From positions 416,839 through 480,838 of the IMG/VR virus record IMGVR_UViG_3300028558_000791: 64,000 bases of DNA. One strand, 5' to 3'. The notes below the pieces were generated by a model that saw only the letters and a program-made list of their open reading frames with translations, was not told the origin of the DNA and ran no database searches. Below are positions 29,996-33,116 of this stretch, piece by piece; position 1 is the first letter of the stretch; the number at the start of each line of letters is the position of its first letter. A program made the position numbers and the translations under genes.

Positions 29996-30052
29996 GGCCG
30001 AGGTGAACAGGAGCTAATCTCAATCGTCGAGGCTAGCTCCCATTCACCAACA

Positions 30053-30087
30053 AGCTACGAGTGAGATTACCTATCAATCTCGTAGCT
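30053..30087 (+). promoter_or_regulatory. Conserved leader hairpin (second copy at 32743-32772)
   Basis: AGCTAC-GAGT-GAGATT-ACCTATC-AATCTC-GTAGCT. Confidence 0.6.
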
Positions 30088-30123
30088 CCAATGACTTCCA
30101 ACTCAACCGCCACGGAGATTTTC

Positions 30124-32208
30124 ATGACTCTCAACGCCACCAACATCCTTCTTCGTCACAACCTCATCGACATCACTCCGACCTCGGGTGAGGATATCCA
30201 GCTTGCTGGTGACGAAGCGCGGGCTACCGTGCTGATGAATCTCGCCTACTACGGCAGGGGACTCAGTACGGAAGGTTACAAGGCGTTCCTCCAGCTTGGC
30301 AAGGGATCCATCGTCGACTTCTGGGCTCGCATCGAACCCGAGTTGAAAGACATTACGGGAGCCGATCGTAAGATGGGCGACTTCGTTGTCTACAAGAACT
30401 TCCCCAAGGAGGTTCTCGACAAGGACGCAGCGGCCTACTGGATTCCCCAGCTCCTCATGTACTGGGGATTCCCCAAGGACTACTTCACTGACCCGGTTGT
30501 TGCTCGTCCCAAGATGGATAAGCAGCCTGCCGTCACGGTTCTCAAGCTGTCCAAGAAGGATACGCTCAAGAGCATCCTCGATTCTCACGTGCAGTCTCCT
30601 GCTCGTTGGAAGGATCAGGAGTTTCAGGAAGTGGTTTTCCTTTCGGAAACCCTGCCTGTCAACTTCGCCAAGCTGGTGTTCAAGGAGAACCTCGTCAAGC
30701 TGGCGACTCACTTCATGACCAGTGGCCGCAAGGTCAACATCACCACGGCAACCGACGTTCTTCGTCTGGCTGCTGGCCTGAGTGATGGTGACGTGTCGCT
30801 CCGAACCAAGTTCAAGTTCAAGTCTTTCAAGAAGCCGATGCGTCGGTTCCTCCTTTCCATCCTGGAAGGGTGTGCCAACTTGGAAGAGGACGTGGCACGC
30901 CGACCGGAACTGTTCAAGCGCCTGTTGCACAACCTGCATGCAGGTGACTTCAAGCGTTCCTACCCCCGAGTCATCAAGGTGGCCGATGATCTCTACAAGG
31001 ATCGTCTCGTCACTTTCAATGGCAAGGTGGAGAGCATGCTTCTCGCCAAGAACTCCGAGGTTCTCGACGTGCTCTCGACTCGCCCTGGTGACTTCCGAAG
31101 GCGCCTGGTTCACACCTTGGACCTTTTCGGCAAGCAAGCAGCCCAGGCTTTCACGTCTGCTGACGTGTTGAGCAAGTTGACGGTCAATCAGCTCGTTGCA
31201 ACCCGTTCCTTTCTGGGAATGGCCAACGAGAGGAAGGCTCGCATCTTCCCGCCCAAGGGGAATTGGAGTCTTGCCAAGTTTGGTGAGCCCAGGCCGGTCA
31301 CCAAGTCCAGTCTAAAGATCATCGACAAGGCTCTTGCTGCTGCTCTTCGTGAGCGAGTGCCTGCTGTTGGTGTGCTCGACCCTGCCACCAGCAAGGTCAA
31401 GTTGCCGAACAACGGTGAGGAGGGACCGTACACTCGTGGTACTGTCTTCCCGATTCCGGAAGGAACGGACTTCATCCGTACGGCTTCCTACTGGAACGTC
31501 AACGCCAAGGGCTACACCTGGTTCGACAATGGCTGGAACTTCTTCAGCGATGATTGGAAGCCGGTGGGCGCTTGCTGTTGGAGCAGCCCCAAGTTCCCCG
31601 GTCATCGTTGGGACATGAAGGCCAACGACCAGAACACTGGAGCGGTCTTCTCTGGAGACCCGACCATTGCCAAGGGCAAGGCGTGTCAGATGATCGACCT
31701 GTATCCCGAGCAGCTTCGTGCTGCTGGTGTCAGGTACGCTGTCTGGAGCGTTCTCTGCTACTCGGGAATGACCTTCAACGATGCAGAGGAAGTCTTCGCT
31801 GCATTCCAGTGGGGCAAGGATGCCAATAAGGGTAGGCTTTTCGAGCCGGCCCGTTGTCAGCTTGCCATCCCTCTCAAGGGTCAGCAGTTGACCAAGTACG
31901 TCGTTCTCATCGACCTCGATAAGAACGAGATGATCTATCTGGATGCAGGACTCAAGAGCAGCGTTCGTAGCGCTGAGTCGAATGGTCCTCTTCTCCAGAA
32001 GAATCTTCCGGCCTTCATGGAATACATCAAGGCACTTCCCTCTGTCCATGACCTCTTCCGAGAGTCTGTGGATGCAGGTAGCAACACTAAGATCCTCTAC
32101 TCCGATAAGGATGCGAGCCTTCGAGGTGAGTCTGCCTACGTCTTCAAGCAGGAGAACAAGGACAGCAAGTACAAGTCGGTGGACCTGAACGGTCTATTGG
32201 CGAAGTGA
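30124..32208 (+). CDS. ROT/TROVE-like helical repeat protein with C-terminal TerD-like domain (RING-less relative of the Prok-RING4-associated family)
   Basis: NLAYYG, YKNFP, TATDVLRLA..LSDGDVSL, RPGDFRRRL, then a beta-rich TerD-like part (SYW, FSGD, QMIDL, RYAVWSV.CYSG); GGAG RBS supports ATG 30124. Confidence 0.7.
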   Translation: MTLNATNILLRHNLIDITPTSGEDIQLAGDEARATVLMNLAYYGRGLSTEGYKAFLQLGKGSIVDFWARIEPELKDITGADRKMGDFVVYKNFPKEVLDKDAAAYWIPQLLMYWGFPKDYFTDPVVARPKMDKQPAVTVLKLSKKDTLKSILDSHVQSPARWKDQEFQEVVFLSETLPVNFAKLVFKENLVKLATHFMTSGRKVNITTATDVLRLAAGLSDGDVSLRTKFKFKSFKKPMRRFLLSILEGCANLEEDVARRPELFKRLLHNLHAGDFKRSYPRVIKVADDLYKDRLVTFNGKVESMLLAKNSEVLDVLSTRPGDFRRRLVHTLDLFGKQAAQAFTSADVLSKLTVNQLVATRSFLGMANERKARIFPPKGNWSLAKFGEPRPVTKSSLKIIDKALAAALRERVPAVGVLDPATSKVKLPNNGEEGPYTRGTVFPIPEGTDFIRTASYWNVNAKGYTWFDNGWNFFSDDWKPVGACCWSSPKFPGHRWDMKANDQNTGAVFSGDPTIAKGKACQMIDLYPEQLRAAGVRYAVWSVLCYSGMTFNDAEEVFAAFQWGKDANKGRLFEPARCQLAIPLKGQQLTKYVVLIDLDKNEMIYLDAGLKSSVRSAESNGPLLQKNLPAFMEYIKALPSVHDLFRESVDAGSNTKILYSDKDASLRGESAYVFKQENKDSKYKSVDLNGLLAK

Positions 32209-32352
32209 ATGAGCAGCAATACTGGAAGGCTAGGACATACTTGTCCTTCCAGTACGCTAAAACTCCTGTCAAAGACAGGAACAACAAACCACCAACTCCT
32301 TCCGAGTGCCTCTTGTATGAGATGGTATTCGAGTATCAACGGGGAGTTGAAA

Positions 32353-32736
32353 AGTTAGTCGGGCCATGAAGATCCTTCCTTCTACAAAAAAATGGAAAAA
32401 CAGGGTCTACGCTTTCCCGACGCTAACTACCTTCTAGGAATGCTAGCCAGTGTAAGGCTTTCCCTTGGTCCACCTATAAGCGACATGATGCATAGGCGTG
32501 TCGGGGAACCTAGCTAGAAGGTACAATGTCATGGGCTATAAGGAGTCTTCCTTCTACTCACAGGCCAAAAGCCTGTATCAAAAATAGACTCCTTGCTTTC
32601 CCATACTGATGAGCCATGAGAATCCTTCCTTCTAAAAACGGATAAAACAGGGTTCTTGCCTACTCATCATTGACGAGCCATGTAAGGTCTTCCTTCTAAT
32701 ACATGCTAAATAAAACAGACCTTACGCCTTCTCGTC
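32353..32736 (+). ncRNA. Tandem array of at least four covarying structured RNA units
   Basis: Units 32358-32421, 32531-32604, 32607-32669, 32672-32736: stem-GC(C/T)AT-9 bp stem-TCCTTCTA-A-rich loop-stem'-GC-pyrimidine bulge-stem'. Confidence 0.8.
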
Positions 32737-32742
32737 TCTAGT

Positions 32743-32772
32743 CCTGAGTGAGATTACTTATCAATCTCAGGG
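32743..32772 (+). repeat. Second copy of the 30053 hairpin with a different outer stem
   Basis: CCT-GAGT-GAGATT-ACTTATC-AATCTC-AGG. Confidence 0.7.
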
Positions 32773-32852
32773 CACCGGCGCCACGAACACAAGTAAGTCC
32801 TTTCCTTCCAGGCAATGTAGTTTGATGGCGCCTCTAATTGTAATAGAGGAAT

Positions 32853-33116
32853 ATGGAACACATCGAAGACCCTCCTCCTTGTCGTCATTGCGGGCGCTGT
32901 GTTTTCTGTGGTCCTCCATGCTGTGATGGTATGGCTGCTGACCAAGAAGCTTGGTACAAATCTCCAGAGTATCTGGAATTAGTTCGCAAGCAAAAGGAAG
33001 AGAGCATACGTGCCAAGGCAGAAAGAAAAGCTGCCAAGAAATTGAGGCGAGCCAAGCAGCTTGCCGAACGAAACGGCCCTCCCATTCACGGCAACCCGCA
33101 ACCACAAGAAAAATGA
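32853..33116 (+). CDS. Cys-rich basic hypothetical protein
   Basis: CRHCGRCVFCGPPCC; GAGG RBS. Confidence 0.6.
   Translation: MEHIEDPPPCRHCGRCVFCGPPCCDGMAADQEAWYKSPEYLELVRKQKEESIRAKAERKAAKKLRRAKQLAERNGPPIHGNPQPQEK

What the first reader, a model, noticed from the sequence alone, without database searches (positions are those of the whole stretch)
30053..32772. TROVE-like/TerD protein followed by a tandem array of covarying ncRNAs: candidate Ro60/Y-RNA-like RNP system
Seen: four units follow the 30124..32208 gene (32358-32421, 32531-32604, 32607-32669, 32672-32736). Their stems differ in sequence but stay paired: outer GTCGGG/CCCGAC, ATGGG/CCCAT, TGATGAG/CTCATCA, GACGAG/CTCGTC; inner GAAGATCCT/AGGGTCTAC, AAGGAGTCT/AGACTCCTT, GAGAATCCT/AGGGTTCTT, GTAAGGTCT/AGACCTTAC. 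A GC(C/T)AT...GC internal loop and an unpaired TCCTTCTA are invariant. Compensatory change across four copies indicates selected RNA structure. Established: Ro60 (TROVE) genes are typically adjacent to the Y RNAs they bind, and ROT/TROVE-like repeat + TerD proteins have been proposed to act in RNA processing. Inference: this phage encodes a Ro-like protein with its own multi-copy RNA ligands, acting as scaffold, decoy/sponge or RNA-quality-control module.
Basis: partly seen in the sequence, partly recalled or inferred. Interest (0 to 1): 0.9.

Follow-up and report, generated by a model that had tools for sequence, protein, structure and literature searches.

The report
New hairpin RNA family with protein partner
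A giant phage carries four copies of a previously uncatalogued small structured RNA next to a large uncharacterised protein, and this RNA-protein pair recurs in many phages and seven or more bacterial phyla, so it is probably a new RNA-protein particle that resembles the Ro60/Y-RNA system in layout but not in ancestry.

Summary
The four units (32358-32421, 32531-32604, 32607-32669, 32672-32736, + strand) are two-helix hairpins. They share an invariant UUCCUUCU at the start of the apical loop and a conserved GG-CYAU / GCUUY-CC internal loop.

A covariance model built from them finds 89 units in all (the four here included) beside homologues of the 694-aa protein:
- in 14 phage loci;
- in 40 of 45 bacterial chromosome loci (Myxococcota, Cyanobacteria, Actinomycetota, Bacteroidota, Proteobacteria, Chloroflexota, Leptospiraceae).

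Covariation is strong: 91.6% of cells paired against 58.5% when shuffled, and 14 of 16 pairs show double changes. No other gene is conserved next to the protein.

In phages the RNA is amplified to 2-8 copies and often alternates with tRNAs. One myxobacterial copy carries a YrlA-like tRNA-like module.

The protein is an alpha-solenoid plus a TerD-fold domain. It is not detectably TROVE (Pfam, Foldseek and hhalign against genuine Ro60 are all negative). The RNA is absent from Rfam 15.

Best reading: a new RNP that is Y-RNA-like in logic only. Its function is unknown and is inferred to lie in RNA or tRNA metabolism.

The parts
30037..30047 (+). Copy of the phage-wide 11-mer CTCCCATTCAC (promoter-like motif), about 85 nt upstream of the start codon. 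The next copy is at 33079, beyond the array.
   Evidence: 54 copies in the window, 53 on the + strand, against 1.55 expected. None lies between the gene and the array, so co-transcription is plausible. This is inference.
30053..30087 (+). 5' bracketing hairpin. The stem is AGCUACGAG/CUCGUAGCU, and its top carries the 23-nt element GAGTGAGATTACCTATCAATCTC.
   Evidence: The 23-mer occurs only twice in the window, at 30059 and 32746. The fold has z -5.3. It is absent from related loci other than the window's own contig.
30124..32208 (+). Gene for a 694-aa protein: an N-terminal alpha-helical solenoid (about residues 1-430) and a C-terminal TerD-fold beta-sandwich (about 438-694).
   Evidence: AF2 model with pLDDT 90.3 and pTM 0.88. 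TerD structures match the C-terminal part. phrog_33734, function unknown. Partial match to NF041916, below its cut-off. More than 600 homologues.
32215..32258 (+). Strong hairpin directly after the stop codon, with no U-tract.
   Evidence: Fold -20.4 kcal/mol, z -4.6. A hairpin lies at the same position in L005 by reading of the sequence; it was not folded. It is not called as a terminator.
32358..32421 (+). Hairpin RNA unit 1
   Evidence: R2 69.7 bits, E 4.7e-16. Fold z -3.6.
32531..32604 (+). Hairpin RNA unit 2, with an extra small hairpin in the variable loop.
   Evidence: R2 58.5 bits, E 2.1e-13. Fold z -5.6.
32607..32669 (+). Hairpin RNA unit 3
   Evidence: R2 42.2 bits, E 1.5e-9. Fold z -3.4.
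32672..32736 (+). Hairpin RNA unit 4
   Evidence: R2 69.9 bits, E 4.2e-16. Fold z -5.3.
32741..32773 (+). 3' bracketing hairpin. It carries the same 23-nt top element as the 5' one (one C/U change) on a different lower stem (CCUGAG/CUCAGG).
   Evidence: z -2.9.

Best explanation
The region is a two-component module: a protein gene and an array of small RNA genes that most likely encode the protein's RNA ligands.

The RNA. Each is a rigid two-helix hairpin of about 65-90 nt. It displays two invariant pyrimidine-rich single-stranded elements about one helical turn apart:
- UUCCUUCU, directly 3' of an invariant U-A closing pair;
- the GCUUY strand of an internal loop closed by two invariant G-C pairs.
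The rest of the apical loop is free to vary, from 10 to more than 90 nt. It sometimes holds an extra hairpin and, in one case, a whole tRNA-like module.

Proposed mechanism. The alpha-solenoid/TerD protein recognises the invariant elements, and the variable loop serves as an adaptor or regulatory surface. This makes it a Y-RNA-like RNP in logic, built from a non-TROVE protein and a new RNA family. Giant phages have captured the module from bacteria, amplified the RNA to 2-8 copies, and express it like tRNAs, either from their own strong promoters or inside tRNA arrays where tRNA-processing enzymes would release it. The likely field of action is RNA or tRNA metabolism or surveillance during infection.

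Shown here: the RNA structure, the gene-RNA linkage, the fold of the protein, and the absence of TROVE homology.
Inferred: binding of the RNA by the protein, expression of the RNAs, and the function.
For: 1. Linkage.
- Units lie within a few hundred nt of the gene in all 14 phage loci found by protein similarity.
- They also lie there in XacN1 and Xoo-sp13, L066 and 40 of 45 bacterial loci.
- More distant homologues at 22-25% identity (RcXuper, LpeD, WXIN) keep hairpins at the same place with a drifted loop motif, UACUUCUA. This suggests co-evolution of protein and RNA.

2. The reverse test holds. Of 80 stretches found by an RNA pattern alone, 30 match the model, and 19 of those 30 hold the gene inside the stored stretch. 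None of the 50 chance pattern matches does.

3. No other conserved neighbour exists.

4. The structure is under selection.

5. The RNAs act in trans as separate genes.
- Units lie upstream or downstream of the gene.
- Four bacterial units lie on the opposite strand.
- Some units sit in tRNA arrays with no gene in the stored stretch, alternating with tRNAs at gaps of 0-22 nt.
- In XacN1 the array has 12/12 and 11/12 sigma-70 consensus promoters of its own.

6. Modular, Y-RNA-like design. The L036 unit carries a YrlA-type T-arm, closed acceptor stem and D-arm in its apical loop.

7. The protein's invariant residues are rich in Arg, Lys, Trp and Tyr and include no His. The two domains pack as one body (pTM 0.88).
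Against: - There is no expression data and no binding data.
- The protein has no recognised RNA-binding domain.
- Two bacterial loci with full flanks (L052, L038) have no unit within 2.5 kb.
- Some phage units have no gene within 4 kb or more (L089, L138).
- Most bacterial units lie inside the probable UTRs of the gene, which also fits a cis-acting element.
- The tRNA-like module is seen in only 1 of about 90 units.
- Alignments fitted to a covariance model lean towards its structure, although the independent alignment agrees.
Confidence: 0.6

Rival explanations
1. The hairpin is a cis-acting autoregulatory element. It lies in the gene's own 5' or 3' UTR, and the protein binds it to control its own translation or mRNA stability. 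It would not be a free small RNA.
For: - In bacteria the unit starts at the stop codon (the Dactylosporangium loci) or 20-90 nt before the start codon.
- Most of the 50 bacterial units at E<=1 are on the gene's strand (4 are not).
- In the window no promoter-like motif or terminator separates the gene from the array.
Against: - Four bacterial units lie on the opposite strand (L023, L028, two in L036).
- Phage units sit between tRNAs with no gene in the stored stretch.
- Phages carry up to 8 copies, on both sides of the gene (L093, L145).
- XacN1 has its own consensus promoters in front of the units.
Confidence: 0.15
2. The hairpins are decoys or sponges aimed at something other than the neighbouring protein, for example a sequence-specific ribonuclease, a tRNA- or rRNA-binding factor, or the ribosome. 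The invariant pyrimidine motif would mimic a universal cellular RNA site. The protein would then process, stabilise or deliver the RNAs.
For: - UUCCUUCU is invariant in 89 of 89 units across phyla, where a purely protein-specific site might be expected to drift.
- Copy number is amplified in phages.
- Units are embedded in tRNA and tmRNA islands.
- The layout of multiple hairpins, each with one invariant loop motif, recalls the CsrB/RsmZ sponges (my own knowledge).
Against: - The motif does drift together with the protein in distant family members (UACUUCUA in RcXuper and LpeD, GCUUUC in WXIN).
- Bacterial copies are single and have no tRNA context.
- No complementary AGAAGG site was found in the adjacent tmRNAs.
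- No specific target was identified.
Confidence: 0.12
3. A type III toxin-antitoxin-like pair: a toxic protein held in check by an adjacent array of repeat RNAs.
For: An RNA repeat array lies directly beside a protein gene, and the module is mobile and appears in unrelated genomic contexts.
Against: - There is no PADLOC match for six family members.
- The protein is a 690-aa solenoid plus TerD domain, not a small ToxN/AbiQ-type endoribonuclease.
- The units are diverged paralogues with conserved structure, not near-identical direct repeats.
- Bacteria usually carry one unit, which may lie downstream of the gene or on the other strand.
Confidence: 0.03
4. The hairpins are genomic punctuation without an RNP role: processing or terminator hairpins of stable-RNA operons, or a REP-like repeat.
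For: - In phages they alternate with tRNAs at gaps of 0-22 nt.
- Units 2-4 in the window are head to tail, 2 nt apart.
Against: - Invariant single-stranded motifs are kept across 7 or more phyla while the stems covary.
- The hairpins are strictly linked to one protein family in bacteria, where no tRNA is nearby.
- There is no U-tract.
Confidence: 0.03

Closest known systems
Ro60 (Rsr, TROVE + vWA) with Y RNAs (YrlA/YrlB, Yrn1)
   Same: - A large helical-repeat protein with a metal-binding-type C-terminal domain, encoded beside one to several small RNAs.
- Each RNA is a long stem formed by its 5' and 3' ends, with a conserved protein-facing motif and a variable or modular distal part.
- Present in bacteria and in phages.
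- One unit here (L036) even carries a YrlA-type tRNA-like module.
- Y RNAs are also multi-copy next to rsr (PMC4201824).
   Different: - The protein has no TROVE or vWA_Ro60 domain by Pfam, Foldseek or hhalign, whereas genuine phage Ro has both.
- The C-terminal domain is TerD, not vWA.
- The RNAs lack the GNCGAAN0-1G / GGUCCGA Ro-binding motif and, with one exception, the T and D arms.
- No link to rtcB or PNPase was seen.
TerD-family proteins (tellurite-resistance TerD/TerE; structures 2qz7, 3ibz, 2qng)
   Same: The C-terminal beta-sandwich matches at Foldseek probability 1.0, TM 0.62-0.65. By my own reading of the sequence, a conserved SGDP motif resembles the TerD calcium-site motif.
   Different: - The Pfam TerD model does not match.
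- The domain is fused to a 430-aa solenoid.
- It is not in a ter operon.
- It is linked to an RNA, which is not known for TerD proteins.
NCBIfam NF041916, MXAN_6230/SCO0854 family RING domain-containing protein
   Same: Clear sequence homology over profile positions of about 385-735 of 842, covering the rear of the solenoid plus the TerD domain. E values are 1e-34 to 1e-62 in six members.
   Different: - Scores are 119-212 bits against a cut-off of 600.
- The N-terminal third of the profile, which by the family's name should hold the RING domain, is not matched.
- Whether that family also has the RNA was not tested.
Protein-sequestering multi-hairpin sRNAs (CsrB/RsmZ with CsrA/RsmE)
   Same: Tandem hairpins that each present the same short single-stranded motif in the loop. 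The stems are free to vary.
   Different: - The motif is pyrimidine-rich (UUCCUUCU), not GGA.
- The partner gene is adjacent and unrelated to CsrA.
- Bacterial versions have a single hairpin.
Type III toxin-antitoxin systems (ToxIN, CptIN, TenpIN)
   Same: An RNA repeat array directly beside the gene of the protein it is thought to bind.
   Different: See the rival explanation: the repeats are not identical, the protein fold is different, and there is no defence-database match.

Membership tests
Ro60/TROVE - Y RNA system | Protein contains a TROVE domain (Pfam PF05731) | tested here: not met
   No TROVE hit at E<=1 in the window protein or in any of 53 family members. The positive control, phage ET08 Ro, hits TROVE at 4.7e-49. 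hhalign of the family profile against 18 phage Ro-like homologues (two confirmed by Pfam) gives a probability of 0.2-0.3%.
Ro60/TROVE - Y RNA system | HEAT-repeat ring plus vWA fold, as in the solved Ro60/Rsr structures | tested here: not met
   Foldseek against the PDB lists no Ro60 or Rsr chain in the top 50 for the whole model or for the N-terminal domain alone, where the best E is 0.27 and the matches are generic solenoids. The C-terminal domain is TerD. Caveat: fold searches are weak for helical repeats, and the ring shape could not be inspected.
Ro60/TROVE - Y RNA system | One or more small RNA genes encoded next to the protein gene | tested here: met
   This feature describes the layout and is not specific to the family.
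Y RNA / YrlA (Rfam RF02553) | Ro-binding motif near the 5' end (GNCGAAN0-1G in bacteria, GGUCCGA in animals), per PMC4201824 | tested here: not met
   The consensus of 89 units has GGCYAU, UUCCUUCU and GCUUYCC instead. There is no YrlA hit on the window units, even at E<=10.
Y RNA / YrlA (Rfam RF02553) | tRNA-like domain (T arm, D arm, closed acceptor stem) | tested here: not met
   Absent from the four window units. Present in only one related unit, L036 105-243, which scores 44.3 bits against the gathering score of 69 and matches model positions 23-86 only.
Ro60/TROVE - Y RNA system | Physical binding of the RNA by the protein | not testable with these tools
   Needs co-purification or a gel-shift assay.
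TerD family (Pfam PF02342) | TerD beta-sandwich fold | tested here: met
   Foldseek probability 1.0, E 6e-5 to 2e-4, TM (target) 0.62-0.65 to 2qz7, 3ibz and 2qng.
TerD family (Pfam PF02342) | Match to the family's sequence model | tested here: not met
   No TerD hit in Pfam for 53 members. No sequence hit in the PDB.
NF041916 MXAN_6230/SCO0854 RING-domain family | Score above the curated cut-off (600 bits), with the N-terminal RING region present | tested here: not met
   119-212 bits. Only profile positions of about 385-742 of 842 are matched.
Type III toxin-antitoxin | ToxN/AbiQ-like endoribonuclease with near-identical tandem RNA repeats upstream | tested here: not met
   No PADLOC match. 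The units are 65-73% identical to the reference unit and have different stems. The fold is unrelated.
Any Rfam 15 family | Covariance-model match at or near the gathering score | tested here: not met
   Window at the gathering threshold. The array at E<=10 gives only chance hits of 18 bits or less. Twenty related loci at the gathering threshold give only tRNA and tmRNA.

The most novel reading that the evidence does not exclude
This is a previously unrecognised and phylogenetically broad class of bacterial and phage ribonucleoprotein. A non-TROVE alpha-solenoid/TerD protein has its own dedicated hairpin RNA family (invariant UUCCUUCU). It has arrived independently at the Ro60/Y-RNA design, including occasional tRNA-like adaptor modules. 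Giant phages amplify it inside their tRNA islands to control or protect RNA during infection.
Probability: 0.4. Interest if true: 0.9.

Novelty: new variant of a known kind. Interest (0 to 1): 0.8.

Why it matters
If the pair is an RNP, three things follow.

1. It would add a second, independently built counterpart to the Ro60/Y-RNA system, which is so far the only widespread bacterial 'protein plus adjacent adaptor RNA' surveillance particle.

2. It would give a first functional handle on two large blocks of unannotated sequence:
- a protein family of more than 600 clusters, related to the MXAN_6230/SCO0854 RING family and to 'TerD-like' phage proteins;
- a structured RNA family with hundreds of members that is missing from Rfam.

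3. It would explain part of the unannotated intergenic DNA inside phage tRNA arrays, and would suggest that giant phages import host RNA-handling RNPs together with tRNAs and tmRNA.

The RNA is short, has sharply defined invariant elements, and has cultured sources: RcXuper on Rhodobacter capsulatus, LpeD on Lactiplantibacillus, and Neolewinella persica DSM 23188. Binding and structure are therefore directly testable.

Tried and rejected
Searches that returned nothing useful:
- Rfam at the gathering and E-value thresholds: no family.
- Pfam, PADLOC and PDB sequence search on the protein.
- Megablast of the region against phage records.
- A search for conserved neighbouring protein genes. Only spurious ORFs overlapping the gene itself clustered.
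- PHROG annotation of ten flanking ORFs in the window: uninformative.
- Literature searches for TerD+TROVE, TerD+tmRNA, SCO0854/MXAN_6230, the motif itself, and structured RNAs of phages: nothing on this pair.
- Two Aravind-group papers that may be the source of the 'ROT/TROVE-like + TerD' statement are not held, so that statement could not be checked.

Ideas considered and dropped:
- The loop as an anticodon-loop mimic (CUUCUAA resembles a tRNA-Arg UCU loop). The loop is not a closed 7-nt loop.
- The loop as an anti-Shine-Dalgarno mimic. The CCUCC core is broken, and Bacteroidota, which make little use of SD, also carry the module.
- Loop UCCUUCU forming a triplex with purine-rich 5' strands. 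The 5' strands are not purine-rich in relatives.
- The loop pairing with the adjacent tmRNA. There is no AGAAGG site in four tmRNAs.
- The 107-nt spacer as a decayed fifth unit. The model does not support it.

Not attempted:
- Inspecting the model for a ring shape, because no coordinates are available.
Full report
OBSERVATION

The four units are real and lie at the stated coordinates: 32358-32421, 32531-32604, 32607-32669 and 32672-32736, on the + strand. Each has the same layout:
- an outer stem of 5-7 bp, closed by G-C pairs in units 1-2 (A-U then G-C in units 3-4);
- an internal loop, C-Y-A-U on the 5' side and G-C-Y-U-W on the 3' side;
- an inner stem of 9-10 bp ending in C-G and U-A;
- a large loop that opens with UCCUUCUA and ends A-rich.

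On the + strand the folds have z-scores of -3.4 to -5.6, and none of 200 shuffles does as well. The - strand is worse for units 1 and 3, and U-G pairs fit only the + strand. TCCTTCTA occurs 6 times in the window against 1.57 expected. The 107-nt gap between units 1 and 2 is not a unit. The gene at 30124-32208 is a sound 694-aa ORF with a GGAG 7 nt before the ATG.

THE RNA IS A CONSERVED FAMILY LINKED TO ONE PROTEIN FAMILY

The protein has more than 600 homologous clusters, mostly on phage contigs of 200-500 kb. In the cultured Xanthomonas jumbo phages XacN1 and Xoo-sp13, whose proteins are 41% and 39% identical, reading the intergenic DNA showed three and two hairpins directly upstream of the gene. 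They have the same layout and the same UUCCUUCUA, but entirely different stems.

All 17 loci then in hand had TCCTTCTA two or more times (once in L007) on the gene's strand, next to the gene. A covariance model built from the four window units found 33 units in 14 loci, all on the gene's strand. A second model built from those found 89 units at E<0.01 in 62 sources.

Covariation on the 89 units:
- 91.6% of cells are paired, against 58.5% in shuffles and 42-51% when partners are slid by 1-3 columns.
- 14 of 16 pairs have changes on both sides.
- The covariation score is 0.795, against 0.179 in shuffles.

That alignment is fitted to the model, so I repeated the test with a plain MAFFT alignment of 30 units and RNAalifold. 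It predicts the same two helices, with compensatory changes in 13 of 14 pairs.

Invariant or nearly invariant positions:
- the two G-C pairs that close the outer helix;
- C and A of the 5' internal loop;
- CUU of the 3' internal loop;
- the U-A pair that closes the inner helix;
- UUCCUUCU, in 89 of 89 units.

DISTRIBUTION

A scan of one genome per species found homologues at 33-48% identity in chromosomes or large contigs of:
- Myxococcota;
- Cyanobacteria;
- Actinomycetota (Dactylosporangium, Virgisporangium);
- Bacteroidota (Saprospiraceae, Microscillaceae, Neolewinella);
- Alpha-, Beta- and Gammaproteobacteria;
- Chloroflexota;
- Leptospiraceae.

Forty of these 45 loci have one or two units within 2.5 kb. 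Of the five without, three are truncated contigs and two (L052, L038) have full flanks. In Dactylosporangium the unit begins at the stop codon. In other genomes it lies 20-90 nt before the start codon. Four units lie on the opposite strand (L023, L028 and two in L036).

Clustering all flanking ORFs showed no other conserved neighbour, either among phage loci or among bacterial loci. The RNA is the gene's only constant companion.

The reverse test also holds. An RNA-only pattern search of viral contigs gave many stretches. Of the first 80, 30 match the model, and 19 of those 30 contain the gene within the stored DNA. None of the 50 stretches that fail the model, which are chance pattern matches, contains it.

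Remote family members keep hairpins in the same place with a drifted loop motif: UACUUCUA in RcXuper (23% identity) and LpeD (22%), and GCUUUC in WXIN (24%). That is what co-evolution of a protein and its ligand would look like.

PHAGE-SPECIFIC FEATURES

Phages carry 2-8 units. L093, L145 and L181 have four on each side of the gene. In at least 19 phage loci the units lie in stable-RNA islands on the same strand as tRNAs. In L107 and L119 they alternate with tRNAs at gaps of 0-22 nt, so RNase P and the 3'-end tRNA-processing enzymes would release them. tmRNA genes lie beside the array in L003, L011, L018, L069 and L184. None of the 46 bacterial units has a tRNA nearby.

In XacN1 two sigma-70 consensus promoters, 12/12 and 11/12, stand directly in front of the units, and a G+C-rich hairpin separates the array from the gene. 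There the RNAs are therefore separate transcription units.

In the window, by contrast, no promoter-like element lies between the gene and the array, and the hairpin after the stop codon has no U-tract. Read-through from the gene is likely there.

THE PROTEIN

Pfam gives nothing. PHROGs gives phrog_33734, of unknown function. AlphaFold2 with 53 sequences gives a confident model with pLDDT 90.3 and pTM 0.88. It has an all-helical N-terminal part (about residues 1-430) and a C-terminal beta-sandwich with a helical insert.

Foldseek against the PDB matches only the C-terminal part, to TerD structures 2qz7, 3ibz and 2qng, at probability 1.0 and TM 0.62-0.65. Against viral models, full-length relatives appear in Lactobacillus phage LpeD and in Campylobacter phages IBB35 and CP21.

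NCBIfam shows clear but sub-threshold homology to NF041916, the 'MXAN_6230/SCO0854 family RING domain-containing protein', over profile positions of about 385-735 of 842. The family is therefore a RING-less relative of it. There is no PADLOC match.

IS IT TROVE-LIKE?

I tested this in three ways.
1. Pfam TROVE matches none of 53 members.
2. The N-terminal domain, modelled alone (pLDDT 88.6), has no PDB match better than E 0.27. The top hits are generic solenoids such as designed repeat proteins, PP2A B56 and MO25, and no Ro60 appears.
3. I fetched a genuine phage Ro (ET08 gp220) and 17 relatives. Pfam calls ET08 gp220 and the most divergent of them (L200) TROVE + vWA_Ro60. hhalign of this alignment against the family profiles gives probabilities of 0.2-0.3%.

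The only echo is that the best, insignificant alignment places the family's invariant TATDVLRLA over the Ro alignment's conserved WTHRDLLRLAH. Homology to TROVE is therefore not supported. A very remote relationship cannot be excluded.

THE Y-RNA ANALOGY

One unit in a Myxococcota genome (L036 105-243, minus strand) has, after UUCCUUCUA, a short stem, a T arm, a closed acceptor-like stem and a D arm. Rfam's YrlA model matches this insert at 44.3 bits, E 2.7e-7, over model positions 23-86 of 114. That is the tRNA-like domain but not the Ro-binding stem.

The hairpin can therefore serve as the protein-side stem of a modular RNA whose distal part is a tRNA mimic, as described for YrlA (PMC4201824). 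The window units do not have this module, and the family lacks the Ro-binding motif GNCGAAN0-1G. It is not a Y RNA by membership. The resemblance is one of design.

MECHANISM PROPOSED

The protein binds the two invariant pyrimidine-rich single strands, which the two covarying helices hold about one helical turn apart. The variable loop is the free or adaptor end.

Phages acquired the module from bacteria, multiplied the RNA, and express it with their tRNAs.

The field of action is most likely RNA or tRNA metabolism or surveillance. This part is inference from the phage context and from the one tRNA-like insert.

I put about 0.6 on 'RNP of this protein with these RNAs'. The four rivals are set out in the Rival explanations section, with confidences of 0.15, 0.12, 0.03 and 0.03.

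NOVELTY

Neither the RNA (Rfam 15) nor the gene-RNA pair (eight literature searches) appears to have been described. I file it as a new variant of a known kind: a protein with adjacent adaptor RNAs, as in Ro60/Y RNA. Both components are unrelated to the known ones by every test I could run.

Noticed in passing
window 3141-61656 (for example 30037-30047 and 33079-33089): The 11-mer CTCCCATTCAC occurs 54 times (allowing up to 1 mismatch), 53 of them on the + strand, against 1.55 expected. Copies are spaced 100-900 nt apart and are densest between 3 and 35 kb. It also lies in front of genes in the related phage L005. It is probably a phage-specific promoter or intergenic regulatory signal.
   Followed up: partly
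window 30053-30087 and 32741-32773: Two hairpins share a 23-nt top (GAGTGAGATTACYTATCAATCTC, itself a small inverted repeat) on different lower stems. They bracket the gene plus array exactly and occur nowhere else in the window. The related phage L005 lacks them. They could be processing sites, a protein-binding site, or scars of cassette insertion.
   Followed up: partly
L001 (Xanthomonas phage XacN1) 3663-3738: A 76-nt cloverleaf-like RNA lies between hairpin units 1 and 2, behind a perfect sigma-70 promoter. It has a 7-bp acceptor stem, a discriminator A, an encoded CCA and a T-arm-like hairpin, but no proper 7-nt anticodon loop. Neither ARAGORN nor Rfam calls it.
   Followed up: partly
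L036 105-243 (minus strand), Myxococcota MAG contig: A hairpin unit carries a YrlA-type tRNA-like module in its apical loop (Rfam YrlA, 44.3 bits, E 2.7e-7). It is the only such case among about 90 units.
   Followed up: yes
L003 808-1105, L011 2372-2789, L018 1880-2302, L069 4738-5049, L184 7798-8154: Phage-encoded tmRNA genes lie within 2 kb of the hairpin arrays. Two of them (L011, L018) are permuted, and the RcXuper copy (L018) also matches the alphaproteobacterial tmRNA model. The four tmRNAs checked (L003, L011, L018, L069) contain no sequence complementary to the hairpin motif.
   Followed up: partly
L010 1650-3761 and L117 2835-2913, 6491-6565: The homologue in L010 has one in-frame stop codon. 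L117 carries two tRNAs with anticodon CUA, that is, amber suppressors. Some of these phages may therefore read a stop codon as sense, or else the L010 gene is broken.
   Followed up: no
window 32427-32437 and 32510-32520: The spacer between units 1 and 2 holds a 10-nt inverted repeat, UACCUUCUAG / CUAGAAGGUA. One arm resembles the loop motif and the other is its complement. The overall fold is not significant (z -1.0), and the model does not call a unit there.
   Followed up: partly
window protein residues about 209-217 (window 30748-30774): The invariant TATDVLRLA aligns with the Ro alignment's conserved WTHRDLLRLAH in an otherwise insignificant profile comparison (probability 0.27%). This may be what suggested 'TROVE-like'.
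   Followed up: yes
L001 1721-2584, L002 1403-2263, L018 5608-6597: A gene annotated as a nucleotidyltransferase lies within 0.5-1.5 kb of the module in XacN1, Xoo-sp13 and RcXuper. My ORF clustering linked only the XacN1 and Xoo-sp13 copies, and the gene is not conserved across the other loci.
   Followed up: partly
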